This document shows positions 329 to 55,217 of a stretch of 64,000 nt of DNA, in pieces (positions within the stretch are counted from its first letter, which is position 1; each line of letters begins with the position of its first letter). The translations under genes were made by a program, and so were the position numbers. The notes under the pieces were generated by a model. The model ran no database searches. It was given only the letters and a program-made list of their open reading frames with translations, and had not been told where the DNA came from. The DNA is taken from positions 1 through 64,000 of IMG/VR virus record IMGVR_UViG_3300024259_000010; one strand, written 5' to 3'.

Positions 329-3300
329 CCAGCCATACCAACTAGTCCACCACCAAGAACAAATTTACCAAGTTTGGATTTACCAAGCTTAGAGTTTTTG
401 ATCTTACCAGCAATACCTCTAGCAGCCATACCAGCTAATCCACCAGTAGCCATGAATCCAGCGACCTTACCAAACTTAGTTTTCTTAAACTTAGCAAACG
501 CACCTTCATTTTCAATACCTTCTTCTTCAGCCTTCTGTCCAGCTTCCCACTCTTCTTTATCCTTAGATTCAACATCTTCAGGATTAAGTTTGCCATCAGC
601 TTTAGCAGTCATAAACTTGTTAGCCATATTTTCAGCTTCATCACGTTTACCAGCTTTGAATAAAGATTTGAATTTCTTAATGAATTTTTTAGATGCATTC
701 TTTTCAGTTAAAGTATCAACCCAGTTATCTAATTGTTGATCAGCGTAAGCACCAGCGGCCATCTTCTGAGCCTTCTCAGCTTTCTTACGAGCACGGCGCT
801 TCTTAAGTTTCTTAGCAAGTATAACACCACCTACAGCAACACCAGCAACAGCTAATGCAGGTAATAGGAATGGTGCGGCAGCAGCGGCAGCACCAGCAAT
901 GGCTGTACCAGCAGCAGCACCTGCTCCAGCAAGAGCAGTTCCAGCAGTAGCAAGACCTCCACCAATAGCACCAGCTCCAGGTATCATAGTAGCTAACCCT
1001 GCGGCTTTACTACCAAATCTACCAAGTGCCCCACCAATCTTTCCAAACTTACCTAGCTTACCAAGATTCTTGGCATTCTTACCAGCTTTCGCTAGCTTAG
1101 CAGCCTTCTTAAGTTTACGAGCATCATTCAAACCTTTGAGTGTATTACCAGTATCGATCGCTGCAGAGATACCCATACCAGCACTACCTATCTTACCTAG
1201 TAAACCAGGTTTGTTAGCTAGATTCTGCATACCACCTTTGAGCATACCTTTTGCATCAGTCATATTAGCAGGTACTTTAATTCCCCTACCTTCAGCCTTT
1301 GCCCGCATCTGATCTAAGTATGAACCTTTACGATGTACATCTTCTTCATAATCATCTTCAGCATCGTCAGCACTACCTTCATCATCCATAGGATTGGTTT
1401 TACTAGCAGTAACACCAGCACCAGCTTTACCTGTTGATCCAATAGTTGGAGAAGTTGTAGTAGGTTCACCTGTAGTTGCGCCTAACCGTGTGTTTAATAG
1501 TTCATACATAGTGGAATGGTTTTCATTAACGGCTGCAGTCAATTCTTCAACTTTAGCAGCAATACCTCCACTACCGAAACCCATATCACTTAGTTTGTCT
1601 TTAGCATATCCCATTGCTCCGAGACCTGCTTTACCTGCACCCTTAAGTATAGAGCCATAAACTCCAACACCACCAGACAACACATTAAGACCACTGCTTA
1701 GTAAACCACCAGCTCCAGCAAAAGCTCCACCTAGATCGATATGTATTCCACCACCTGCTCCATCATAAATGGATTTACCAGATACTGTAACTAGACCTTT
1801 TTCAATATCTTCTTCAGATACTAATACGTCTCCAGTTTCAGAATGAATAATAGGTGAGGTGATCTCAATTGTTTTCTTAAGTCTTTTTTTAGTCTCTGCA
1901 ACAAGACCATTCTTTTTCTGAACCTTAGCAGAAACTAGTGGACTACCAACTTTGACTTCATCTTTGATATATACATCGACAAAATTAGGTTGAACAGCTA
2001 AACCAGGAACTTTATCTACTAATGATTTAGCAAGACCGAATCCTCCTTTATAGAATTCTCCCATCATGTCTAAACCACTACCGGCTATATCACTACCACC
2101 TTTGGCTAATATACCAGCTAGATCTCCAAGTTTACCAACACCAGTTCCAAGAGCACTACCAATATGAGGAGCAGCTTGACCAGTTTTATCAGCAAGCCAT
2201 TTTCCAGCACCTTTAAGACCTTTACCATAAGTTGTAGCAACACCACCAATAGTTCGTCCAAGTTTTCCACCACCAGATTTAATACTATCTTTAGCACGTC
2301 TGGTAAGACTCTTAGTGATTTCCCACTTAGTATCTTTAATCATGTCGTCATCATCATAGCCTTCTAAACTTCCAGTTTTAGCGAATACTCTAAATGATTT
2401 ATGGAAACTCTTCATCTCTAGTAGTAATCTAGAACTACCAATAGTTTTATCTTGAACAGTACCGATTGCACCTAATGCCTGATCCTTTAAAGATACAGCA
2501 CCTTTTTTAAGACTATCAAAACCATACATGGATTTAATTGCCAAGGTTTCAGCCCCGGATGCAATCTTATCTCCAGCATACATTCCTTTAATCTGAGCTG
2601 TCTCTATACCAGATCTAGCTTTAGTCACATGACTGGATATATTCTTATCATAAAAGTCTTTAGATACGGTTCTATATTTAGTAAGCTTCTCTCTAACAGA
2701 TGCATTAGTAGCATCAACTGTTTTCATAAGTTTATCTTGGTCTTCTTCCGAGACAACCTTACTAATCTCTTTCATGATAACAGAGTTGATCTTTTTAACA
2801 CGATTGATAACAGATGGATCTTCATCTGGATCTAATTCAGCAGCTTTGTTTAATTCTTTTATTAAACTACCTACCTTCTTTTTAGATCTAGTTAGATCAG
2901 CTCTAAGTTCATCGGGAGTTTTGTTCAATTGAGTATCCACTGCATCAACTACTGATTTACCAGCACCTAATGCTTTGTCCTTAGCAGAGTTTCCAATACC
3001 AATAGCTTTTCGTTTAGCTGACATTCCAGCACTAGGCATAGGTCCAATAAAGTCAGGATCACTAGATGTGTTGCTATAAAGACCTTTCGCCTTTTTAACC
3101 CCTTGTTTAACACCATGTTTAGCTCTGTCAAATGTGTTTTTACCAGTACCCATGGCCATCTGTTTGATGGTCTGTTGTGGCATAGGTCCAACCATCTCAG
3201 GCATAGGTCCATAAAAATCACCAGAACTACTACCTGCAACATTAGAATACTCAGGTGTTTCAATTCTAATTGTCCCATCTGCATCAACAGAAATTGGAAC

Positions 3301-5442
3301 ATCACCAGATGCACCTGAAATATAAGATGCTAGATCTGATAGTAAGAATACATCTTTCTTAGCTAACTTACCAGCAGCGGTTTTAATACCGGATGGGATA
3401 TTCTGAGCAAATTTTGAATTGGTAAAATTCTCACGATCTTCTCGATAGATCATGCTTAAATCTTTTGTCTGTTGAGCTGCTCCACTTAGATAACTACCTG
3501 GATCATCAGAAAGAGAACTTTCTGCAATATTCAAACGTTCTTTATTGAGAGCATCTGTGGAAAACTGTCCACCATCTATATCATCAGCAAAAAGATTATA
3601 TGATCCAAATGTTTCCAATGTACTAGATAGTTTAGTTCTTAATGTATCATTAGCATGTGCATTATGAATACCATCATTGATAAAACTTATGTTTTCATTA
3701 TTTTTAGTACCATCAGGATTAAAATATAACGCCTTGATTAACTGGATAACTCCAATAGGGTCTTTAGTACCCTTCATCAATAATTTAATACCTCGTCCGG
3801 TCAGCTCTTCTGGTTTACTAGCAGCAGTTGCTTCTTTGATAACCCTTGCACTAATAGTAACACCATTGACAACAGCGTTGTTAATAACGATCAATAAATC
3901 TGCTTCTAATTCTTTATATGTGGATTCCTTGACAGTTGACGTCATTGCAGCTATACCTTTGATAGCACCCAATGATTCTACCATGGCTTGACCACGTTCT
4001 TCAGGAGCACCAAGCATAGATTCCATCACAGAAGCTTTAGCCTGAGTCATTGAAACGATTTTACGTTTCTTGGGATCATATGCTTCTATTTCAGTATCAG
4101 TACCAGTAACACTATCTCTAGTATTTTTAGCAATTTTAGATAACCATAGAGGTATGACTTCAACAATAGATTGACGAGTAGCGTTATCAAATACAGAGGC
4201 AGTTGCTCCTTCTTCAAATAATTGATTACCAACATCTACATGTGTCGTCTTCTTGGGTATCATGCTTCCGATTAATTTCAAAGCAATATTATCGGATTCA
4301 CTCAACGCATCGGCAAAGTCACGACCACCAGTTTTAATCTTACCTTGAACAGTTCTTGCTGTTCTATCGGCAACGTTAGCAATAGGTCTTATTTTATTAA
4401 GAGCAGATCTCCCACCGATCATACCAAGTATTGTACCAAGTGGACCACCGGCTTTCTCGCCTTTGCTTTTACCCATACCCAATTGATCAAAGTCGCCTTC
4501 CATGTCCCTTTCGACTTCCATGCTATCAATGAGCATATCGAGCATAGGAGCTAACTGTCCAATGTTATCAACCACATTTGATTTAAATCCTTTGGCAGCG
4601 CCTCCTACCATACCACTAATAGAATTAACACCAAGATCTGCAATCTTACCACGAACACTATGTTTTAAAAATTCAGCTGATTGTGCTTTTGCAACTTCAG
4701 GTAAGGCAGTGTTCTTACTAACAATAGCGATATTGTCTTCGAACGATTGTGCAAATACTTTCAATACACCAAGAGTTTCTTTAGAAGTATATAAGTGCAT
4801 ATACTTTAACTCAAGCATTTTCTTCATCCAGTCCTGCTGAGCAGAAACTGTATATTGATTTGAAAATTCTAACTGTGAGTTAATATTGGATAACATTCCA
4901 ATAGTGCTTCTATGTCTCAGTGAGTCACGGGCTTTGTCAACTAACTTATCAGCCCGAGCATGTTCATCTTTTGTCTTATTGGTACTAGCTATATTTGCAA
5001 ACATAGCTTCAGATGAAGCTCGTGCTACATTCTGTGCTTCAGAATATGCATCCTCAGCTTCAGCACCCGTTGATTCAGAAGAGGATTTGGAAAACTCTTC
5101 TAGCTTATTATACATGCCTTTTGGAATGAATCGTTTAGCAGTAGGTAAAGCAAATGCGGTAGCACGTTTTCCAACAATGGCAGCCTTACGTACTTCAGCA
5201 CGTAGTTCACCGAGTGATTCAACACCTATATCTTTTGCAGCACCTATGTCGCTTAATAACTCAGATGTATTAGGCATTGAACTTAAAATATGTTTACCAG
5301 CAGTTTTCATTCCAGCAGGTACACCTGCTTTAACTAAGTCTTTGGCATTGGAACCCAATCCCATTACTGGTTTTCTAGATTTAGGATCTATTGAATCAGA
5401 TGAATAATTACTGCTGAAATCATCAGCCATAAAACTATCCAT
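1..5442 (-). CDS. Large tail/tape-measure protein, phiKZ gp181-like (C-terminus beyond the window, >1814 aa)
   Basis: ATG at 5442 (alternative 5430). The frame was translated or spot-checked by hand to position 1 with no stop seen; it is absent from the ORF track because its stop is outside the window. Ala/Gly/Lys-rich, with FDNATRQSIVEVIPLWLSKI and VDVYIKDE segments resembling phiKZ gp181-type proteins, and a hydrophobic segment PFLLPALAVAGVAVGGVILA. Confidence 0.75.
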   Translation of the reverse strand, partial: MDSFMADDFSSNYSSDSIDPKSRKPVMGLGSNAKDLVKAGVPAGMKTAGKHILSSMPNTSELLSDIGAAKDIGVESLGELRAEVRKAAIVGKRATAFALPTAKRFIPKGMYNKLEEFSKSSSESTGAEAEDAYSEAQNVARASSEAMFANIASTNKTKDEHARADKLVDKARDSLRHRSTIGMLSNINSQLEFSNQYTVSAQQDWMKKMLELKYMHLYTSKETLGVLKVFAQSFEDNIAIVSKNTALPEVAKAQSAEFLKHSVRGKIADLGVNSISGMVGGAAKGFKSNVVDNIGQLAPMLDMLIDSMEVERDMEGDFDQLGMGKSKGEKAGGPLGTILGMIGGRSALNKIRPIANVADRTARTVQGKIKTGGRDFADALSESDNIALKLIGSMIPKKTTHVDVGNQLFEEGATASVFDNATRQSIVEVIPLWLSKIAKNTRDSVTGTDTEIEAYDPKKRKIVSMTQAKASVMESMLGAPEERGQAMVESLGAIKGIAAMTSTVKESTYKELEADLLIVINNAVVNGVTISARVIKEATAASKPEELTGRGIKLLMKGTKDPIGVIQLIKALYFNPDGTKNNENISFINDGIHNAHANDTLRTKLSSTLETFGSYNLFADDIDGGQFSTDALNKERLNIAESSLSDDPGSYLSGAAQQTKDLSMIYREDRENFTNSKFAQNIPSGIKTAAGKLAKKDVFLLSDLASYISGASGDVPISVDADGTIRIETPEYSNVAGSSSGDFYGPMPEMVGPMPQQTIKQMAMGTGKNTFDRAKHGVKQGVKKAKGLYSNTSSDPDFIGPMPSAGMSAKRKAIGIGNSAKDKALGAGKSVVDAVDTQLNKTPDELRADLTRSKKKVGSLIKELNKAAELDPDEDPSVINRVKKINSVIMKEISKVVSEEDQDKLMKTVDATNASVREKLTKYRTVSKDFYDKNISSHVTKARSGIETAQIKGMYAGDKIASGAETLAIKSMYGFDSLKKGAVSLKDQALGAIGTVQDKTIGSSRLLLEMKSFHKSFRVFAKTGSLEGYDDDDMIKDTKWEITKSLTRRAKDSIKSGGGKLGRTIGGVATTYGKGLKGAGKWLADKTGQAAPHIGSALGTGVGKLGDLAGILAKGGSDIAGSGLDMMGEFYKGGFGLAKSLVDKVPGLAVQPNFVDVYIKDEVKVGSPLVSAKVQKKNGLVAETKKRLKKTIEITSPIIHSETGDVLVSEEDIEKGLVTVSGKSIYDGAGGGIHIDLGGAFAGAGGLLSSGLNVLSGGVGVYGSILKGAGKAGLGAMGYAKDKLSDMGFGSGGIAAKVEELTAAVNENHSTMYELLNTRLGATTGEPTTTSPTIGSTGKAGAGVTASKTNPMDDEGSADDAEDDYEEDVHRKGSYLDQMRAKAEGRGIKVPANMTDAKGMLKGGMQNLANKPGLLGKIGSAGMGISAAIDTGNTLKGLNDARKLKKAAKLAKAGKNAKNLGKLGKFGKIGGALGRFGSKAAGLATMIPGAGAIGGGLATAGTALAGAGAAAGTAIAGAAAAAAPFLLPALAVAGVAVGGVILAKKLKKRRARKKAEKAQKMAAGAYADQQLDNWVDTLTEKNASKKFIKKFKSLFKAGKRDEAENMANKFMTAKADGKLNPEDVESKDKEEWEAGQKAEEEGIENEGAFAKFKKTKFGKVAGFMATGGLAGMAARGIAGKIKNSKLGKSKLGKFVLGGGLVGMAGRKIAGSKAGKAIGKFGKKMFDRSLPGLALKGIKKADKGLGKAIDDPKAALKKTGKFLATGGLVGMGARKIAGSKAGKAIGKFGKKMFDRSLPGLALKGIKKADKGLGKA

Positions 5443-7730: not shown

Positions 7731-7814
7731 GGCCGCATGGCGGAATGGCAGACGCAACGGTCTTAAAAACCGTTTTCTTCGGAAGTGTGAGTTCGACTCT
7801 CACTGTGGCTACCA
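7731..7814 (+). tRNA. tRNA-Leu(UAA)
   Basis: Acceptor GGCCGCA/TGTGGCT, D arm GCGGAATGGCAGACGC, anticodon arm ACGGT-CTTAAAA-ACCGT, long variable arm, TTCGA T loop, encoded CCA. Confidence 0.95.
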
Positions 7815-8846: not shown

Positions 8847-9389
8847 ATGAAAATAGAAATACTCACACCATTATTAGTACGCTGTCGCCGATATGGAATC
8901 TCATTTGATTATGGATGGGATGATGAAACTGATACATACAGATTAAAGCTATTCATAAATAAGACTAAAGTATATGATACTGGTCCGACTATGGAAATAG
9001 AAGCTGGTGTGCAGGAAGCTATTAAACGCATTGATAAAGAAAATGAAAATGGTGATCTTAATAACCATACTAATGTTATCGATGCTACTATTAATGTAGA
9101 TAAAGAAGATTCTGAGTTATTCCACAAGATCAAGGAAACTATTGGATTCTTACTTGGTGTACCTGAGAAAAAGATTACATTGAAATCAAGTATCGTAGAA
9201 GATCTTAAAGCTAATTCATTGGATTCAGTTGAATTGATCATGCAGATTGAAGAAGACTTTGGTGTTACTATCTTGGATGAGGACGCTGTTAAAATTAAGA
9301 CAGTGGAAGATATCTATAATTGGGCGGTAGCATATGGCTCACCTAGTTGTCGAGTACTTGCTGTAACTAAGATAACCAAAATAGATTAA
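8847..9389 (+). CDS. Acyl carrier protein domain fused to an unknown N-terminal domain
   Basis: EDLKANSLDSVELIMQIEEDFGVTILDEDAVKIKTVEDI matches the AcpP consensus except DSL is NSL. Confidence 0.85.
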   Translation: MKIEILTPLLVRCRRYGISFDYGWDDETDTYRLKLFINKTKVYDTGPTMEIEAGVQEAIKRIDKENENGDLNNHTNVIDATINVDKEDSELFHKIKETIGFLLGVPEKKITLKSSIVEDLKANSLDSVELIMQIEEDFGVTILDEDAVKIKTVEDIYNWAVAYGSPSCRVLAVTKITKID

Positions 9390-9446
9390 TTAAGAATATG
9401 CAAATCTTGCTTTCAAAAAGTGAGTTTAATAATTTATATCCCTGAG

Positions 9447-9830
9447 TATAATAAGTTGGTTATGCGGATTGCTTGTTTGCGGTCGGCCTGCTTATAACTA
9501 ATTGGGGTATATAAAATCCATGATGTACCGGCGTATCCTTCGGGGTACATTACCCACGTCATGGTCTAGTATATTGATTACTTGTTATTGTAACCCATAC
9601 GAGGGTTATTAGAGTATACGGTATCATGTTGATGATTCCTTGCCTGAAGACGGGCAAGTGGAGACAGTACTAAACAATATGCAAACCAGTAAACAGTCTG
9701 GCAGAACGGGGAGCAACTAGCCCGCCAGATGAGGACCTATACATTATTTATAGGAGGGTCGGGAGCAGTGGCCTTTTAAATCACTATCATGAAAAACAAT
9801 GATAGCACTGCCACCAATTTATTGATTATA
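9447..9830 (+). ncRNA. Candidate ~385-nt structured ncRNA (RNA-B), family unassigned
   Basis: 11-bp closing helix (9450-9460/9813-9823), at least 7 internal stems, no ORF of 60 aa or more on either strand, terminator follows. Confidence 0.65.
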
Positions 9831-9870
9831 AGATACTACTGGATTGTCCAGTAGTATCTTATATATTTTT
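9828..9870 (+). terminator. Long hairpin terminator
   Basis: Perfect 16-bp IR ATAAGATACTACTGGA/TCCAGTAGTATCTTAT plus T-rich tail. Confidence 0.8.
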
Positions 9871-9893
9871 TAAAAATTAAAAAGGAGTATTAT

Positions 9894-10181
9894 ATGAAAT
9901 ATGTAATTGTAAATGATGGATGGGATACAGACCCAGTACCATGTGCTCATGTCTTCTCAGAAGAGATTGGTCACAAAATGGTTGTGGATATGAATACCCA
10001 AGTTATGAGCGCAGGTTTCTGTAATGTAGTGGACGGTCGAATGATTGTTCAAGTTGGTCGTCCTTCTGATTCATTAAATATTGGACCTGCACCTAATGAT
10101 GGAGATCTTCTAACAAAATTAATCCTCCAAGGCAAAGAGCCTATGGATATTGTACGTGAGCGAAGGGATGCTAATGAATAA
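9894..10181 (+). CDS. Hypothetical protein
   Basis: 95-aa ORF, AAGGAG RBS. Confidence 0.8.
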   Translation: MKYVIVNDGWDTDPVPCAHVFSEEIGHKMVVDMNTQVMSAGFCNVVDGRMIVQVGRPSDSLNIGPAPNDGDLLTKLILQGKEPMDIVRERRDANE

Positions 10182-10695
10182 AATAACTAAAATGAAATTA
10201 TGTGTATGGTGGTTCCATCGTGGTCAGAAATATGGTGAGTTGCCATACACATTCCACTTAAATCAATGTTTTGATAGACTACTTGGTTTACACTGTGTAG
10301 ACGTAGATCTACTATGTGCTATGCTTGGTCATGATCTATTTGAAGATACGAAATGTTATTATGCATTTGTTGAAAAACATTTTGGATATCGTGTAGCAGA
10401 GTTGATCAAGGGTATGACTAAGAGTCAAGGAGCTGATTATACGAAGTATGTCAAATCTATTACAAAGAGGACTGAATATCGTAAGGATGTTATGATCCTT
10501 AAAATGATTGATAATATTTGTAACCATACTAATAGTTACATGACTCGTGACCGTAGACGTATGACTAAGTATGAAGGTTCGTTAGGTATATTGCGAGAAA
10601 CATGTGATATGTTATTACATACCAAATCTATATCTGAAATGGATGCGTTACATCAGTTAATAGCGTCTATGGCAGTCCCGACAATTGAGGAATAA
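10174..10695 (+). CDS. HD-domain hydrolase, RelA/SpoT (Mesh1 / small alarmone hydrolase)-like
   Basis: HRGQKYGELPYTFH, GHDLFEDT and KMIDNICN match SpoT-type HD motifs. Confidence 0.8.
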   Translation: MNKITKMKLCVWWFHRGQKYGELPYTFHLNQCFDRLLGLHCVDVDLLCAMLGHDLFEDTKCYYAFVEKHFGYRVAELIKGMTKSQGADYTKYVKSITKRTEYRKDVMILKMIDNICNHTNSYMTRDRRRMTKYEGSLGILRETCDMLLHTKSISEMDALHQLIASMAVPTIEE

Positions 10696-10712
10696 ATTAA
10701 AGAAAGAAAAAT

Positions 10713-10952
10713 ATGAATGATCATGAAATTTTATTAAAACATTATACCATACGTAGAGGTAGTAATGTAATATTCTTTATAATGAATGGTATGTTCACAT
10801 TAGGGTTTGCATATTTATTACCTGCGATAACGGTTGAGTATAATCCAATCACACCATTACCATGTATGCTTGTATGTATATATTTTGGTATAAAGTATAT
10901 ATATACTAATCGTATATGTAAAGAATTAACGAATAAATTAAAAGGAATATAA
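10713..10952 (+). CDS. Membrane protein (2 TM)
   Basis: 79-aa ORF with two hydrophobic segments. Confidence 0.7.
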   Translation: MNDHEILLKHYTIRRGSNVIFFIMNGMFTLGFAYLLPAITVEYNPITPLPCMLVCIYFGIKYIYTNRICKELTNKLKGI

Positions 10953-10953
10953 T

Positions 10954-11358
10954 ATGAAAATTACTGGAGAAATGAAGTCCAAAATAGTATTTGGATTAAT
11001 TATATCAGTATGTGTATTAATTGGAGTATATTGTCTGATCAATATTAATCTCCCATCGAGTGATACTGTTATTTATCGTGTCTCAAACTTGGTAGAAGAA
11101 ACATCACGTGATGTATCATCTACTAGTCGTAAAGAAATTATCGACATGTATGAGATTGAATTAAATAAAGGCATTGCATTAGTTGAAGATATTATTGTCG
11201 AAGAGGAAGTAACCTTCTCTCACCGATGGAGATATAAGAGATTAATGGATAGACTTGAAACAGTTGATAAACTAGATCGACTATATATAGATCTTGCCAG
11301 TATGCAAGAATCAGTTTCTCATTGTAGGATTACGAGGAAACATGTTGAAAAAGAATAA
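10954..11358 (+). CDS. Membrane-anchored hypothetical protein
   Basis: 134-aa ORF with an N-terminal TM segment. Confidence 0.7.
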   Translation: MKITGEMKSKIVFGLIISVCVLIGVYCLININLPSSDTVIYRVSNLVEETSRDVSSTSRKEIIDMYEIELNKGIALVEDIIVEEEVTFSHRWRYKRLMDRLETVDKLDRLYIDLASMQESVSHCRITRKHVEKE

Positions 11359-11476
11359 ACAATCATGTGGTAGATGTGGTGGACAACTACCAAACCGATG
11401 TTATATCAATTAATATCAGATGGTGTCAAGTTCTGTATACCAAAGAAATATAAGTAATTCATTTAGTTTTTAAGTA

Positions 11477-11484
11477 TATATTAC
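11477..11484 (+). promoter_or_regulatory. Early promoter TATATTAC
   Basis: Exact motif, intergenic. Confidence 0.8.
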
Positions 11485-11525
11485 TTTATTGCAATCTGGA
11501 CATAACTTCAGAGGAGGAATAAATT

Positions 11526-11630
11526 ATGAGTAAATTATATGACGATGACCCATTGGACACTACTAATTATACACCATCTGACGATGACCGTCAAGATGAA
11601 CAACAAGATGGCGAAGACGCTTTGGATTAA
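11526..11630 (+). CDS. 34-aa acidic micro-protein MSKLYDDDPLDTTNYTPSDDDRQDEQQDGEDALD
   Basis: Strong GAGGAGG RBS right after the promoter; below the ORF-track cutoff. Confidence 0.65.
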   Translation: MSKLYDDDPLDTTNYTPSDDDRQDEQQDGEDALD

Positions 11631-12497
11631 ACTCGTTTGGGTGAGTATAAACCGATGTGGATCGGACTCTGTAAATCAAACAACAATATGTAAGTCACTA
11701 GTACACGGTATCATTCCAGTGAGTAGGTGGCTATAAACAGTTAGAAATATCTGTAGCTCGAAACTATGAGCAGAGCATATGTTGATGTATGTAAGAGTAG
11801 CTTATTAGGCCCAACAGCGTTGAGAGAAGAGTTACCTACCACTTACCTAGTGGATGGACGAACCTACCAGGTTCAAACTTCTCTCAGGATAAGAATCACC
11901 TATGTTGTGTTATGAACTGCCTGTACCTAATCGGGTGGATTGTAACATAACCTCTAATAACGTCGAAAGACTTGATCTATTATAGATCAACGGGAATAAC
12001 TAAGAGTAGGGGATAAGTCTGCTATAAGGACTCTTAGAAAAACCTGTGTCATCTTGATGCCTTATCGAGATGGTTGTGTGATGCTTTAACCGGGAGACTT
12101 AGAAGGAATATCTATGTCAGATCAGCAAGCGGTTAAGGTTTAAATATAGATGCTCATTAAGCACAAGGTGATAGCTTCATCTATGTGAGCAGTTGGTTAT
12201 TTCAAGAGTTGGAGTTTAGCGAGTTAGCACTTATCGTGTGAGCGTTTGCTCCAACCCTTGACCTATTTTATAAATCTCTTGATCTTTAATAATGATGTGG
12301 TACTTGTATACCAAATGTTTATGTCATTGTTATTGATCGGGCTCCACGTCTACGTCCTTTCATACTACGTAACGTCGGGTTAAGTAAACACAAAAAGAGA
12401 GAGTAAATCCTAGCCCTGGTTAGGTTGAGTCATCAGTGGATATTACAATAAGTTCTAAACATTGTAGTTGTGATATCCTGTTTCGGCACCTGATGAC
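11631..12497 (+). ncRNA. Candidate giant (~870 nt) structured ncRNA (RNA-C), family unassigned
   Basis: At least 15 stems with G-U pairs and nested multi-stem domains; no ORF of 60 aa or more from 11737 to 12590; ends in a terminator. Confidence 0.72.
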
Positions 12498-12526
12498 AAG
12501 AAACTTCTAATAGTTTCTTTTTTTTA
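12498..12526 (+). terminator. Rho-independent terminator
   Basis: AAGAAACT/AGTTTCTT plus poly-T. Confidence 0.75.
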
Positions 12527-12547
12527 ATTTCATGTGTTATTTAGGTA

Positions 12548-12555
12548 TATATTAC
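12548..12555 (+). promoter_or_regulatory. Early promoter TATATTAC
   Basis: Exact motif, intergenic. Confidence 0.8.
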
Positions 12556-12590
12556 TTTTATGAGAAAGCATTTTAAATGAAAGGAATACT

Positions 12591-12923
12591 ATGCGTAGAA
12601 AACATAAACTTAAATTACAAAGAAAATTCTCTATTATAGATAGATTATTATATCGTAAAGTATTTAACTGTAATGATTCCAAATTAGTACTTGTTGATAT
12701 GGTCACCGCATGTATTAAGTATCGTAGTGAAATATTGAAGTTATATAAACTGGCTAAGATACAATGTGATTATGAATTTACTATGGAGCAACCAGAATCT
12801 CTAGAAGGTCTATATAATGAATTATGTTATATATCAGATCGATTTGGATGCATACATCGTATACAATTGATGTTAAATACACCAGAGTACTATGATAATT
12901 TAAACACGATGTTGGAGGAATAA
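12591..12923 (+). CDS. Hypothetical protein
   Basis: 110-aa ORF, AAGGA RBS. Confidence 0.75.
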   Translation: MRRKHKLKLQRKFSIIDRLLYRKVFNCNDSKLVLVDMVTACIKYRSEILKLYKLAKIQCDYEFTMEQPESLEGLYNELCYISDRFGCIHRIQLMLNTPEYYDNLNTMLEE

Positions 12924-13784: not shown

Positions 13785-14372
13785 ATGATACAAAGTATTA
13801 CATTTGCAAAGGAACTCTTTTGTTTCAAAGTAGGAGATTCATATGACTTCAAACCATTAACATTATTGGTCGGAGATCAAGGGTGTGGTAAAAGCACTAT
13901 ACTGAATCTATTGGGTAAGCAAGGTATGTATGGTAGTACGCAAATGGTAAACATTGAAGTTGGTAAGAATGACAATGGTTTCATTCACCATGATTTTGAA
14001 ATGGCTAGTCATCGTACTAATACTAGCGGACCAAATCCATACTCACCTGATTACAATGACCAGTTGATTAGAATGATTGATTCTAAGTCTATGTCTCACG
14101 GTGAAGCCACTAAGGTTTCCTTTGAAGATTTTGATAGAATTGAAACAGATATTCTTATATTGGATGAACCCGATATGTCACTGTCTATGCGAAGTGTACA
14201 TATGTTAGTGGAACATGTTAAACGATGGATTGATTCAGGTAAGCAAGTTATCTTGAGTTGTCATCATCCGTATCTTATAGAAGCTTTTGATGAAGTATTA
14301 TCCTTGGAACATAAACAATGGATGTCATCTAAAGAATTTATAGAATCACATAATTTAAAGATGGACCTGTAG
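13785..14372 (+). CDS. ABC/AAA-type ATPase
   Basis: Walker A GDQGCGKS, signature-like SHGE, Walker B ILILDEP, H-loop SCHH. Confidence 0.88.
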   Translation: MIQSITFAKELFCFKVGDSYDFKPLTLLVGDQGCGKSTILNLLGKQGMYGSTQMVNIEVGKNDNGFIHHDFEMASHRTNTSGPNPYSPDYNDQLIRMIDSKSMSHGEATKVSFEDFDRIETDILILDEPDMSLSMRSVHMLVEHVKRWIDSGKQVILSCHHPYLIEAFDEVLSLEHKQWMSSKEFIESHNLKMDL

Positions 14373-14439
14373 CTCAGTTGGTCAGAGCAGGACACTCATA
14401 ATGTCTTGGTCGGGGGTTCAAGTCCCTCCGGGTCCACCA
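14363..14439 (+). tRNA. tRNA-Ile2(CAU) (lysidine type; elongator Met not excluded)
   Basis: Acceptor GGACCTG/CGGGTCC, anticodon arm GGACA-CTCATAA-TGTCT, overall pattern like E. coli ileX, encoded CCA. Confidence 0.9.
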
Positions 14440-15001: not shown

Positions 15002-15262
15002 ATGTTAGAAGACGGATTGGGTATACGAATACTAGATAATCCATTCACTGGTAAGAAAATAATAAGTATACCAAAGAGTAGGCAAAGAGCCAAACGCATA
15101 AATGCAATATATATGTGTGAGCGTGCTATTATAATGGGTGGACATTCTTATTATGTAAATGCTTATACAGCTATGCAAGAAGCGGGTATGCAAAAGTGGC
15201 CGTTTACAGAACAAGAAGAAAATGAACTTTTAGAAAGAGATCAAATAAAGGCAAATATATGA
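15002..15262 (+). CDS. Hypothetical protein
   Basis: 86-aa ORF, GGAG RBS. Confidence 0.75.
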   Translation: MLEDGLGIRILDNPFTGKKIISIPKSRQRAKRINAIYMCERAIIMGGHSYYVNAYTAMQEAGMQKWPFTEQEENELLERDQIKANI

Positions 15263-22273: not shown

Positions 22274-22306
22274 AAGATACTTGGGTAAAACCAAGTATCT
22301 TTTTTT
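22274..22306 (+). terminator. Rho-independent terminator
   Basis: AAGATACTTGG/CCAAGTATCTT plus poly-T. Confidence 0.85.
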
Positions 22307-34811: not shown

Positions 34812-34844
34812 AAAAGAAAGGGTGTAAAAACCCTTTCTTTTTTT
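34812..34844 (+). terminator. Terminator (near-duplicate at 35297-35330)
   Basis: AAAAGAAAGGGT-GTAAAA-ACCCTTTCTTTT. Confidence 0.85.
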
Positions 34845-39821: not shown

Positions 39822-39899
39822 GCCCCGGTAGCTCAGTTGGATAGCAGCAACGGCCTTCTAAGCCGTAGGTCACTGGTTCGAGTCCAGTTCGGGGTACCA
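39822..39899 (+). tRNA. tRNA-Arg(UCU)
   Basis: Acceptor GCCCCGG/TCGGGGT, anticodon arm ACGGC-CTTCTAA-GCCGT, TTCGA T loop, encoded CCA. Confidence 0.93.
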
Positions 39900-51080: not shown

Positions 51081-51243
51081 ATTTAAAGTAATAGAATGAA
51101 TATACACATTACCATAATATAGAATGTTTTTCATTACGACATTTCTTGTTTGTTGGTATATATGTTCCTTCTTATATACTTATGTCATATATCAATTAGC
51201 TTGTACTCCGAGTTGATATATAGACAGTCCGCTCGTTGAGCGT

Positions 51244-51629: not shown

Positions 51630-51838
51630 GTAATCTGGGGTCTAACCAACCCCTAATAATTTTCTCACATAAGTATAATAATAAATAAGGAGATAGCAAT
51701 GAATAAGGTATATACTAATGAGTCCACAACAGATCAAGTACTAGATAGTCTATTAGACGCTTTTCTAGGAAGTATCTGGAAGTAAGAAAAATAAATAATC
51801 TTGGGGGAGATTATTTTTTTTCATTCTTATTATAAGTA

Positions 51839-52879: not shown

Positions 52880-53308
52880 GGGCCTGCCTGGTTTCGACAG
52901 TACAATGGAATTCATAACTACAAGTAGAGGATGATCGTCGGCCTCTTTAAACATCGGTCAACAATTAGTTGGAACGAAAGTGATCAACTTCCCTAGTGCT
53001 CGCGCTCTTGCAGCGTAATCACGTCCCTTTTAATTAAGGGAGGGCTTGAGGATACCTAGAATTCTCTGGGATGAAGTATCTTCTAACTTAGGTATACCCA
53101 AAGAGGTGTGCTTAATACAATTAAGCAGAGAGCCCTATAGCAGCAATGCTATTTAAATAGTTAGGATCACTATATGGAAAAGAGATCTGAGTGTGAGTAG
53201 TGCTGTATATACTATTTGGTTTACTAGTAAAGTAAAACTAGGTAAAAACTTGTAACAACGTTATGTTGGAAATTATATTGGACGAGGGTTCGACTCCCTC
53301 CAGGTCCA
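52880..53308 (+). ncRNA. ssrA: tmRNA; tag (A)GTKVINFPSARALAA at 52971-53018
   Basis: 5' GGGCCTGCCTGGTTTCGACAG; 3' GGACGAGGGTTCGACTCCCTCCAGGTCCA with a G3-U wobble; P2 pairings TACAAGT/ACTTGTA and ATAAC/GTTAT; internal ORF ending ALAA-stop. Confidence 0.95.
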
Positions 53309-53390
53309 AATCCACAATAATTACTGCCTCCACGCGGCGTGGGTTGGATACTATACTTAGGTATAGGCTAAATGTAATAAGAAAGGAATA

Positions 53391-54815: not shown

Positions 54816-55034
54816 AAGGGATTATTATGCCTACAGGATTTGAAAGATGTACGCGAAGAAAGCAAACATGGAAAAACATGGACCGTCACCAACGGAAAGC
54901 GTTTCATCGTGAGAATAGATGTAGAGAAATCGAAGGATTACCTTTACTCAAAAAACCCTAAGTAATTAGGTTGGTGGAATATAACCTCGTCCGATGGACA
55001 CCGGTTATCCCTTCTAATATTAACGTATTAGTTT

Positions 55035-55085
55035 ATAAGTACATGCGTAGCATTATGCTACGCATGTACTTATTATAATTTTTTT
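55035..55085 (+). terminator. 17-bp hairpin terminator
   Basis: ATAAGTACATGCGTAGC/GCTACGCATGTACTTAT. Confidence 0.75.
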
Positions 55086-55107
55086 GTAGATCAATCCTTT
55101 ATGGATA

Positions 55108-55115
55108 TATATTAC
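55108..55115 (+). promoter_or_regulatory. Early promoter TATATTAC
   Basis: Exact motif, intergenic. Confidence 0.8.
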
Positions 55116-55217
55116 ATCCATAGAGAAGTGAATTAAAAGCATATCCTTCTTCATCACAAGTGTGATCAGCTGAAAAGCGAAATTGGTGTATATGTCACTA
55201 CAAGTTTAATAAGGAGA

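What the first reader, a model, noticed from the sequence alone, without database searches (positions are those of the whole stretch)
11631..12526. Giant (~870 nt) densely structured non-coding RNA behind a phage early promoter
About 850 bp of a gene-dense phage genome has no ORF of 60 aa or more on either strand, yet it is packed with stems. Examples: CCGAT/ATCGG (11652-65), TTGATCTA/TAGATCAA (11972-90), CTAAGAGT/ACTCTTAG (12000-37), CATCTTGAT/ATCGAGATG (12050-72), CTTTAACCG/CGGTTAAGG (12084-138), ATAGATG/CATCTAT (12146-84), nested TCAAG+GTTGGAG/CTCCAAC+CTTGA (12202-61), and GTCATCAG/CTGATGAC enclosing further stems (12429-97). Mismatches are mostly G-U on the + strand, as expected for an RNA fold. 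It is bracketed by TATATTAC (11477) and a terminator (12498). Established: the large ornate RNAs GOLLD (~800 nt) and ROOL occur in phages near tRNAs. Inference: this is a new or highly divergent giant phage ncRNA. I see no hallmark of group I/II introns, RNase P or GOLLD.
Basis: partly seen in the sequence, partly recalled or inferred. Interest (0 to 1): 0.9.

Follow-up and report, generated by a model that had tools for sequence, protein, structure and literature searches.

The report
Expanded pistol ribozyme heading orphan RNA
A 0.9-kb gene-free stretch of a giant phage genome is a real promoter-to-terminator RNA unit; its first third is an unusually expanded pistol self-cleaving ribozyme, predicted to cut loose a ~640-nt hairpin-rich RNA with no known relatives.

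Summary
Positions 11737-12529 are the longest ORF-free gap in the window, and every frame is full of all three stop codons. The + strand folds far better than shuffles (z -6.1, against -2.1 for the - strand). The unit is bracketed by a phiKZ-type early-promoter motif (11475) and a hairpin plus U8 terminator (12498-12526).

It is not one uniform new giant RNA. Positions 11631-11893 are a pistol self-cleaving ribozyme (Rfam RF02679) that Rfam misses because two insertions split it: 148 nt between the linker and P2, and 48 nt inside P3. A covariance model of the 3' half, trained only on pistols from other phage contigs, hits exactly 11801-11893 (22.1 bits, E 5e-4 over 64 kb). P1 and the linker match Rfam's model, and the P1 loop pairs 6/6 with the pseudoknot partner. 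The predicted cut lies between G11888 and A11889.

The ribozyme starts right after the stop codon of a 34-codon acidic ORF. Cleavage would release a ~638-nt RNA (11889-12526) made of about a dozen stable hairpins (z about -4.8). That RNA has no Rfam, protein or DNA relative. Only near-identical phage strains were found, so covariation cannot be tested and its function stays open.

The parts
11475..11484 (+). phiKZ-type early-promoter-like motif TATATATTAC; the transcription start is expected at or just after its end
   Evidence: There are 15 exact copies, all on the + strand, against 0.75 expected. Copies sit 36-42 nt upstream of SD-led start codons and often about 20 nt after a terminator U run. 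phiKZ early promoters are an AT-rich conserved element with 31-40 nt 5' UTRs (PMC8244752).
11526..11630 (+). 34-codon ORF encoding an acidic peptide, preceded by AGGAGG; its TAA stop abuts the first base of the ribozyme
   Evidence: ORF list. It was called as a gene in every assembly. It is identical in strain B. It has no PHROG hit. Translation itself is not shown.
11631..11646 (+). Pistol P1 hairpin: ACUCG / UGAGU (G11635-U11642 wobble) with the 6-nt loop UUUGGG at 11636-41
   Evidence: Rfam Pistol local hit at 11631-11664, 16.7 bits. The 19-nt P1+linker pattern gave 77 matches in IMG/VR, 64 of them followed by a canonical pistol core. All 10 loci tested pass Rfam's Pistol threshold.
11647..11652 (+). 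Pistol A-rich linker AUAAAC
   Evidence: It matches Rfam consensus AUAAA. The same AUAAAC-C form is seen in the Rfam-verified pistol L047.
11653..11800 (+). 148-nt insertion between linker and P2: hairpin 11653-64 plus a branched domain closed by 11666-70/11794-98
   Evidence: Fold (z -1.82, weak). No Rfam hit or DNA relative. No other pistol in viral contigs, metagenome contigs or genome contigs has a 135-165 nt insertion here.
11801..11804 (+). Pistol P2 5' strand CUUA
   Evidence: Model R2 alignment, all four pairs standard.
11805..11819 (+). Pistol catalytic junction: UUAGG (G11808 = purine 32, G11809 = G33), pseudoknot partner CCCAA(C)A at 11810-16, and GCG at 11817-19 (G40, C41, G42 equivalents)
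   Evidence: R2 alignment to consensus UUAAGCC..G.AGCG. These columns are invariant or nearly so in 30 real pistols. Residue roles come from PMC6154101. The pseudoknot is 6/6 Watson-Crick with C11815 bulged, as in the verified pistols L047 and L071.
11820..11887 (+). Pistol P3: a 10-bp stem (11820-29 / 11878-87, closing U-G) enclosing a 48-nt two-hairpin insertion
   Evidence: R2 alignment. The same helix appears in the unconstrained MFE and centroid folds. Long P3 inserts occur in verified pistols L024, L029 and L088.
11888..11889 (+). Two-nucleotide P3-P2 junction G|A: the predicted self-cleavage site (2',3'-cyclic phosphate on G11888, 5'-OH on A11889)
   Evidence: The junction position comes from the R2 alignment. 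Cleavage in this junction and its strictly conserved length are from PMC4604425. A GA junction occurs in 6 of 52 parsed pistols, including four Rfam-verified ones (L077, L088, L024, L051). Cleavage itself is inferred.
11890..11893 (+). Pistol P2 3' strand UAAG
   Evidence: R2 alignment. The P2-like helix is also in the MFE fold.
11894..12497 (+). Orphan structured RNA: about a dozen stable local stem-loops, for example 11904-51, 11973-89, 11990-12047, 12049-73, 12202-61, 12281-338, 12346-75 and the three-way junction 12429-97
   Evidence: Pair probabilities of 0.9 or more for 117 bp. z -4.85 and -4.70. No Rfam match. No Pfam or PHROG match in any open piece. No DNA relative. Strain B differs at 3 sites, all structure-compatible.
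12498..12526 (+). Intrinsic terminator: an 8-bp A/U-rich stem, a 6-nt loop and a U8 run
   Evidence: P 0.96. It has the same architecture as 17 other hairpin + U-run sites on the + strand. The tool's G+C-rich scan missed it.
12546..12555 (+). Next early-promoter motif, which starts the following unit (110-aa gene at 12591)

Best explanation
The region is one early transcription unit of a divergent phiKZ-like jumbo phage, running from about 11485 to about 12526 (roughly 1,040 nt). It has three parts.

(1) A 34-codon acidic ORF.

(2) Directly after its stop codon, a pistol self-cleaving ribozyme (11631-11893). All core elements are present, but it is expanded about four-fold by a 148-nt insertion between the linker and P2 and a 48-nt insertion in P3.

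(3) About 600 nt of densely hairpinned non-coding RNA ending in an intrinsic terminator.

Once the P2 3' strand is transcribed, the P1 loop (11636-41) pairs with 11810-16. The GCG/purine pocket then forms, and the 2'-OH of G11888 attacks the phosphate to A11889. That yields a ~400-nt 5' fragment (ORF plus ribozyme, with a 2',3'-cyclic phosphate) and a ~638-nt 3' fragment carrying a 5'-OH end and a terminator hairpin.

Other phage pistols sit between two cistrons. Here the downstream 'cistron' is a non-coding structured RNA, so the ribozyme most likely serves to release and end-define that RNA and to uncouple its fate from the small mRNA.

What is shown: the non-coding nature, the unit boundaries by motif, the presence and arrangement of the pistol core elements, and the excess of local structure. 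What is inferred: transcription, catalytic activity despite the insertions, stability and any function of the 3' product.
For: Pistol 5' part: Rfam RF02679 aligns to 11631-11664 (P1 and the AUAAA linker, 16.7 bits). The P1+linker pattern gave 77 matches in IMG/VR. Of these, 64 are followed within 110 nt by a canonical pistol core, and all 10 loci tested pass Rfam's Pistol gathering score.

Pistol 3' part: model R2 was trained on 33 pistol 3' halves from other contigs, with the window excluded. It hits 11801-11893 end to end at 22.1 bits, E 1.5e-5 in 2 kb and 4.9e-4 over the whole window on both strands. The next best hit is 10.8 bits. All 12 modelled pairs are standard. Control: eight loci with chance 5'-pattern matches (64.7 kb) give no R2 hit at E<=1.

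Pseudoknot: 35 of 39 distinct real pistols have a 6/6 Watson-Crick loop-junction match across 11 different loop sequences. The window also has 6/6, with the same 1-nt bulge as the verified pistols L047 and L071.

Catalytic residues: the purine-32, G33, G40, C41 and G42 equivalents are present (roles from PMC6154101). The cleavage junction has the right length, and GA junctions occur in real pistols.

Context: in 28 of 46 pistol loci an ORF of 50 or more codons stops within -10 to +1 nt of P1, as here. In 24 of 46 a gene starts within 150 nt downstream.

Unit boundaries. Non-coding nature. Structure of the 3' part. The three strain-B substitutions are G-U to A-U, G-U to G-C, and one loop change.
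Against: The complete ribozyme scores far below Rfam's gathering threshold (16.7 against 34.5 bits). No pistol with an insertion between linker and P2 was found elsewhere, so it is unknown whether the fold tolerates it. The element could be a crippled relic.

The junction is GA, not the usual GU. The insertion itself is only weakly structured (z -1.82).

There is no expression data. For the 3' RNA there is no covariation: every other copy is 99.7-100% identical, and that low divergence extends into the neighbouring gene, so it is not specific to the RNA. Other tiles of this genome fold as well. Only local hairpins are confidently predicted, not a global architecture.
Confidence: 0.6

Rival explanations
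1. The whole ~870 nt folds as a single giant ornate ncRNA (GOLLD/ROOL-like in lifestyle). The pistol-like segment is an integrated structural domain or an inactive relic, so the RNA acts uncut.
For: There is one promoter and one terminator, with no internal promoter motif. Strong + strand-specific folding holds for the full length. The unprecedented 148-nt insertion and GA junction could have inactivated catalysis. The phage carries tRNAs and a tmRNA, as many GOLLD/ROOL hosts do.
Against: Every catalytic and structural core element of pistol is intact, including the pseudoknot. That is not expected for a relic drifting neutrally. There is no match to GOLLD, ROOL, OLE or raiA even at E<=10. Long-range helices joining the two parts are low-probability.
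Confidence: 0.15
2. The 600 nt after the ribozyme has no function of its own. It would be a long structured 3' tail or spacer, for example a barrier to 3' exonucleases or an insulator between early units, or simply tolerated sequence.
For: No homolog exists anywhere. Only local hairpins are predicted. The phage's + strand is generally structure-biased, and other tiles reach z below -5. Both flanking genes are orphans too, and this early region is mosaic between strains.
Against: Gene-dense phage genomes rarely keep 600 nt of useless sequence. This is the largest gap in 64 kb. Two consecutive 300-nt halves each fold better than all 200 shuffles. GC is raised relative to the flanks. After ribozyme cleavage the tail could no longer protect the upstream mRNA.
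Confidence: 0.2
3. The gap is a decayed protein-coding gene (the former downstream cistron of the pistol), or it hides small translated ORFs.
For: Pistols normally precede a gene. Short ORFs of 27-52 codons exist here.
Against: There are 23-31 stops per frame, of all kinds. No Pfam or PHROG similarity was found in any open piece of 32 aa or more. The short ORFs lack convincing SD sequences and lie inside stable helices. The excess structure is strand-specific. The region is identical in four assemblies, with no frameshift polymorphism.
Confidence: 0.05

Closest known systems
Pistol self-cleaving ribozyme (Rfam RF02679; Weinberg 2015, Harris 2015)
   Same: The P1 hairpin has a 6-nt loop, followed by an AUAAA linker. 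P2 and P3 are present, with the UUA(R)GCC...AGCG junction carrying the purine-32/G33/G40/C41/G42 equivalents. There is a 6-bp loop-junction pseudoknot and a 2-nt P3-P2 junction. The element is in a phage, directly after a stop codon.
   Different: A 148-nt insertion separates the linker from P2; none was found in any other pistol examined. P3 carries a 48-nt branched insert. The junction is GA, not GU. The total length is 263 nt instead of about 60-100. The Rfam score is below threshold. It is followed by about 600 nt of non-coding RNA rather than a gene. The host is a phiKZ-like jumbo phage rather than the Firmicutes-type phages where pistols are usually reported.
GOLLD and ROOL large ornate RNAs of phages and bacteria
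   Same: These are large (about 600-800 nt), non-coding and highly structured RNAs, phage-borne, in genomes that also carry tRNAs. Their function is unknown.
   Different: There is no covariance-model match even at E<=10. No conserved long-range architecture or family of homologs can be shown. This RNA is preceded by a self-cleaving ribozyme and a small ORF in the same unit.
Pseudoknot-type hammerhead ribozyme (PMC11300833)
   Same: The secondary-structure connectivity is almost identical to pistol: a hairpin loop pseudoknotted to a junction, with two further helices.
   Different: The hammerhead core (CUGANGA ... GAAA) is absent from 11631-11893, and the junction carries the pistol signature instead. 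The only CUGAUGA (12490-96) is a paired stem strand with no helix II.
Intercistronic self-cleaving ribozymes in phage and bacterial operons (twister, hammerhead, twister-sister, pistol)
   Same: The ribozyme is placed between the stop codon of one cistron and the next functional element. The proposed role is processing polycistronic transcripts into parts with different fates (PMC6765202).
   Different: Here the released 3' part is not an mRNA.

Membership tests
Pistol ribozyme (RF02679) | P1 hairpin with a 6-nt loop followed by the conserved A-rich linker | tested here: met
   The Rfam alignment at 11631-11652 is nearly identical to consensus. The same 19-nt pattern marks verified pistols in IMG/VR.
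Pistol ribozyme (RF02679) | P2 and P3 helices framing the conserved junction UUA(R)GCC...(A)GCG | tested here: met
   Independent model R2 hits 11801-11893 over its full length, 22.1 bits, E 4.9e-4 over 64 kb on both strands with filters off. All 12 pairs are standard. The negative control is clean.
Pistol ribozyme (RF02679) | Six-base-pair pseudoknot between the P1 loop and the P2-P3 junction | tested here: met
   UUUGGG (11636-41) pairs with CCCAA-A (11810-16, C11815 bulged), 6/6 Watson-Crick. The same bulge occurs in the Rfam-verified L047 and L071. 35 of 39 real pistols are 6/6.
Pistol ribozyme (RF02679) | Catalytic nucleotides: purine 32, G33-C41 pair, G40, G42 (env25 numbering) | tested here: met
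   G11808, G11809, G11817, C11818 and G11819 align to the invariant columns. Residue roles are from PMC6154101.
Pistol ribozyme (RF02679) | Strictly two-nucleotide P3-P2 junction holding the scissile bond (usually G-U) | tested here: met
   The length is 2 (G11888, A11889). The identity is GA rather than GU. GA occurs in 6 of 52 parsed pistols, four of them Rfam-verified. The length rule is from PMC4604425.
Pistol ribozyme (RF02679) | Scores at or above Rfam's gathering threshold as one contiguous motif (operational criterion) | tested here: not met
   16.7 bits against 34.5. The 148-nt insertion forces a local alignment of the 5' part only. L053, with a 24-nt insert, only just passes at 35.2 bits.
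Pistol ribozyme (RF02679) | Mg2+-dependent site-specific self-cleavage | not testable with these tools
   This needs an in vitro transcription and cleavage assay.
GOLLD / ROOL / OLE / raiA large ncRNAs | Match to the family covariance model | tested here: not met
   No hit at gathering threshold over the window. No hit at E<=10 over 11400-12700 or in three sub-windows.
Group I / group II introns, RNase P RNA | Match to the family covariance model, and interruption of a host gene for introns | tested here: not met
   No Rfam hit at E<=10. The flanks are a complete small ORF and a terminator, not exon halves.
Hammerhead ribozyme (including the pseudoknot type) | Conserved core CUGANGA ... GAAA around a three-way junction | tested here: not met
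   The core is absent from 11631-11893. The CUGAUGA at 12490-96 is a stem strand with no helix II before GAAA. No Rfam hit.

The most novel reading that the evidence does not exclude
The 3' cleavage product (11889-12526) is the founding member of a new class of large structured phage RNAs. It would be made as a ribozyme-released, 5'-OH-ended molecule from an early transcript of a phiKZ-like jumbo phage. The 148-nt domain inserted into the pistol core would act as a control module, making release conditional on a signal such as translation of the abutting small ORF, a ligand or a protein.
Probability: 0.25. Interest if true: 0.8.

Novelty: new variant of a known kind. Interest (0 to 1): 0.55.

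Why it matters
The biological role of phage-borne self-cleaving ribozymes is an open question (PMC6765202). In this locus a pistol ribozyme does not precede a gene. Instead it sits between a tiny ORF and a 600-nt structured non-coding RNA inside a cleanly delimited early unit. That gives a concrete hypothesis to test: the ribozyme acts as a maturation device for a large ncRNA.

The locus also shows that a pistol core may tolerate, or be regulated through, a 148-nt insertion at a position not known to accept one. Standard Rfam scans miss such split ribozymes, so comparable cases may lie hidden in other 'orphan' intergenic regions.

If the ribozyme turns out to be inactive and the tail inert, the locus is merely an oddity of one uncultured phage.

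Tried and rejected
- **Known RNA families.** Rfam at gathering threshold over the whole window, and at E<=10 over four sub-ranges, gave only chance-level hits (mir-977, snoRNAs, RydC, KCNQ1OT1) apart from the partial Pistol match.
- **Stop-codon recoding.** Rejected, because all three stop codons are dense in all frames.
- **Pseudogene or small proteins.** No Pfam or PHROG hit in any open piece, each searched separately.
- **DNA similarity.** No blastn match in 50,697 phage records. nhmmer and blastn against all fetched loci found nothing.
- **Homologs by synteny.**
  - Flanking proteins of 110 aa and 134 aa have no relatives among 5.8 billion proteins.
  - Viral-contig scans with three neighbouring proteins returned only this contig and one 38%-identical locus without synteny.
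  - The closest AAA-ATPase relatives sit on contigs that are too short or lose synteny upstream.
- **Exact-protein look-ups.** These gave four identical copies plus strain B with only 3 substitutions, so no covariation test was possible.
- **Other split pistols.** A gapped-pattern search for pistols with a 135-165 nt insertion found only this contig in viral contigs and metagenome contigs, and nothing in genome contigs.
- **Alignment and model details.** The MAFFT alignment of pistol 3' halves was unusable at the 3' end, so the model was bootstrapped from three equal-length sequences. With default filters that model misses the window hit; filters had to be switched off.
- **Rejected look-alikes.** The hammerhead-like CUGAUGA at 12490 is a stem strand. 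A second weak pistol-core-like hit at 12153-89 scored 8 bits (E about 10 over the window). A linker-like CUAUAAACAG at 11733 has no partner hairpin. The loop 11924-31 is complementary to 11804-09, but that is at chance level.
- **Not run.** The 34-aa ORF is too short for the homology search.
Full report
**Source and setting**

The window is the first 64 kb of IMG/VR contig IMGVR_UViG_3300024259_000010 (235.8 kb). Its large proteins find only 23-27% identical matches in Serratia, Klebsiella, Ralstonia and Vibrio jumbo phages, so it is a very divergent phiKZ-like jumbo phage. It carries three tRNAs and a tmRNA.

The decamer TATATATTAC occurs 15 times, always on the + strand, against 0.75 expected. 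Copies lie 36-42 nt upstream of SD-led start codons and often about 20 nt after a hairpin + U-run terminator. This matches what is published for phiKZ early promoters: an AT-rich conserved element, a T-rich stretch upstream and 31-40 nt leaders (PMC8244752). That the motif resembles the phiKZ early consensus is my own recollection, and I could not find the exact letters in the papers read.

**Check of the observation**

- All six frames over 11500-12600 hold 23-31 stops, of all three kinds.
- With a 50-aa cut-off, 11737-12529 is the longest ORF-free gap in the window.
- A 65-aa ORF (11539-11736) overlaps the start of the region in another frame. It also overlaps the well-initiated 34-codon ORF (11526-11630) and was not called by any gene caller.
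- The 896-nt + strand folds at -268.8 kcal/mol, z -6.1, against z -2.1 for the - strand.
- In 240-nt tiles the values are -0.45, -5.5, -3.5 and -2.1, against a genome-wide + strand background of -1.1 +/- 1.6.
- The promoter motif at 11475, the terminator at 12498-12526 and the next promoter at 12546 delimit a self-contained unit.

**What the 5' third is**

At E<=10 the only Rfam lead was a local match of the Pistol model to 11631-11664, covering P1 and the AUAAA linker and skipping 37 model positions. Reading on, 11801-11893 looked like the missing core, and I tested this independently.

A P1+linker pattern gave 77 matches at 75 places in IMG/VR. In 64 of them a canonical core follows (UUA[A/G]G, the reverse complement of the P1 loop, then GCG), with a P3 hairpin, a 2-nt junction and P2 after it. 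All ten loci I passed to Rfam are Pistol at gathering threshold.

From these foreign sequences I built a covariance model of the 3' half only (P2-junction-P3-junction-P2).

- With filters off it hits 11801-11893 on the + strand over its full length: 22.1 bits, E 1.5e-5 in 2 kb and 4.9e-4 over the whole window. The runner-up scores 10.8 bits.
- Eight loci that match the 5' pattern by chance contain no such hit.
- The pseudoknot, which neither model scores, is 6/6 Watson-Crick between UUUGGG (11636-41) and CCCAA-A (11810-16) with C11815 bulged. Verified pistols L047 and L071 have the same one-base bulge. Among 39 distinct pistols, 35 are 6/6 across 11 different loop sequences.
- The residues equivalent to purine 32, G33, G40, C41 and G42 of the crystallised env25 pistol are G11808, G11809, G11817, C11818 and G11819 (PMC6154101).
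- Pistol cleavage occurs in the strictly 2-nt junction between the 3' strands of P3 and P2 (PMC4604425). Here that is G11888|A11889, and GA junctions occur in 6 of 52 parsed pistols.

I therefore take 11631-11893 to be a pistol ribozyme.

What is unusual:

- 148 nt (11653-11800) are inserted between the linker and P2. They form a hairpin plus a branched domain whose ends are brought together by helix 11666-70/11794-98.
- P3 carries a 48-nt two-hairpin insert.
- The nearest precedent is a 24-nt hairpin inserted next to P2 in L053, which only just passes Rfam.
- A gapped pattern for 135-165-nt insertions finds only this contig in viral contigs and metagenome contigs and nothing in genome contigs.

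Whether the ribozyme is active with these insertions cannot be computed.

**Context of pistols**

In 28 of 46 distinct pistol loci an ORF of 50 or more codons stops within -10 to +1 nt of P1. In 24 of 46 an SD-led gene starts within 150 nt after P2, at a median of about 33 nt. Pistols are therefore typically intercistronic, which fits the published idea that such ribozymes split polycistronic RNAs (PMC6765202). Here P1 starts at the base after the TAA of the 34-codon ORF, so the upstream side is typical. No gene follows on the downstream side.

**The downstream 600 nt**

The stretch 11894-12497 folds into about a dozen local stem-loops. Some 117 bp have pair probability of 0.9 or more, and all span 70 nt or less. 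The two halves give z -4.85 and -4.70, with 0 of 200 shuffles as good. Long-range closing helices differ between folds and have low probability, so a global 'ornate' architecture is not supported by thermodynamics alone.

- No Rfam family matches.
- No open piece in any frame matches Pfam or PHROGs.
- Nothing similar exists in 50,697 phage records or in any fetched locus.

**Relatives**

The same phage is present, base for base over the RNA, in JGI, ENA and Logan assemblies. A second strain, from three ENA samples (L093-L096), has a different gene block upstream. Its nearby HD-domain gene is 9.3% diverged, yet it differs at only 3 of about 1,070 positions from the promoter to the terminator.

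The three changes are:

- G11919A, converting a G-U pair to A-U in the 11917-38 stem;
- T12020C, converting G-U to G-C;
- T12014C, in a tetraloop.

All three are compatible with the predicted structure. This is far too few changes for a statistical test. The downstream gene is equally conserved (1 difference in 598 nt), so the low divergence reflects a shared recent block, not selection on the RNA.

The flanking 110-aa and 134-aa proteins have no homolog among 5.8 billion proteins. The nearest AAA-ATPase relatives lose synteny or sit on short contigs. Covariation analysis is therefore impossible with the data reachable here.

**Mechanism proposed**

The virion RNA polymerase of the phage would start at about 11485. 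Ribosomes may translate the 34-codon acidic peptide. The pistol folds once 11890-93 is made and cuts at 11888/11889. This leaves a ~400-nt mRNA and ribozyme fragment with a cyclic phosphate, and a ~638-nt 5'-OH RNA that ends in the terminator hairpin.

I consider pistol identity about 0.9 likely, activity about 0.6, and an autonomous function of the 3' RNA about 0.4-0.5.

Because P1 abuts the stop codon, a terminating ribosome would cover P1. Translation could therefore delay pseudoknot formation and cleavage. This is speculation, although it would apply to many pistols.

**Verdict**

The claim of a new giant RNA family is unproven for the rest.

The finding is best filed as a new architectural variant of the pistol ribozyme coupled to an orphan structured RNA. 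It is of moderate-to-good interest, mainly because it offers a testable case for what phage self-cleaving ribozymes do.

Noticed in passing
window 52880-53309: The phage encodes its own tmRNA (Rfam 100.3 bits; ARAGORN tag peptide GTKVINFPSARALAA), plus tRNA-Leu(taa) at 7731-7814, tRNA-Met(cat) at 14363-14439 and tRNA-Arg(tct) at 39822-39899.
   Followed up: no
window 15028-15091: Two assemblies of the same phage (ENA L005 and JGI L006) differ at 11 sites in 20 kb. Ten of these are packed into this 64-nt patch inside an 86-aa ORF, making it a local hypervariable spot.
   Followed up: no
window 10220-11441 compared with L093-L095: A second strain has the HD-domain gene 9.3% diverged, with the differences clustered. 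It replaces the 79-aa and 134-aa genes with a different 103-aa gene, whose 3' end survives in the window as the 27-aa ORF 11374-11457. This shows mosaic recombination just upstream of the RNA unit.
   Followed up: partly
window 1661-2117, 3319-3676, 3992-4344, 9390-9893, 54880-55217; tiles at 51231, 52431, 35151, 14751: These are further ORF-free gaps of 250 nt or more, and 240-nt tiles whose + strand folds as well as the finding does (z -5.5 to -6.5). They may hold other RNA elements or terminators.
   Followed up: no
window, 18 sites on the + strand (e.g. 22276-22306, 34816-34844, 51796-51821): Terminator-then-promoter cassettes recur: a hairpin plus a run of 6 or more U, followed about 20 nt later by TATATATTAC. 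This gives the early region a modular unit structure.
   Followed up: partly
L054, L075, L067, L083, L033; L077:7008-7070; L053:1094-1496: In other phage contigs pistols come in tandem, two or three copies 0.4-0.7 kb apart. One lies inside a tRNA array (L077), and one lies 230 nt from a twister-sister ribozyme (L053).
   Followed up: partly
L009-L012: A 44%-identical homolog of the window's small AAA ATPase (13785-14372) sits inside a Cas gene cluster (Cas_CT1975, Cas5d, CRISPR_assoc families) on phage-like contigs.
   Followed up: no
window 11733-11742: A second linker-like motif, CUAUAAACAG, lies inside the pistol insertion. It hints that the insertion may have arisen by partial duplication. 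No matching P1 hairpin accompanies it.
   Followed up: partly
window 8847-9389 and 10150-10695: An acyl-carrier-like protein (PP-binding) and an HD_4-domain protein are encoded just upstream of the finding, in the early region.
   Followed up: no
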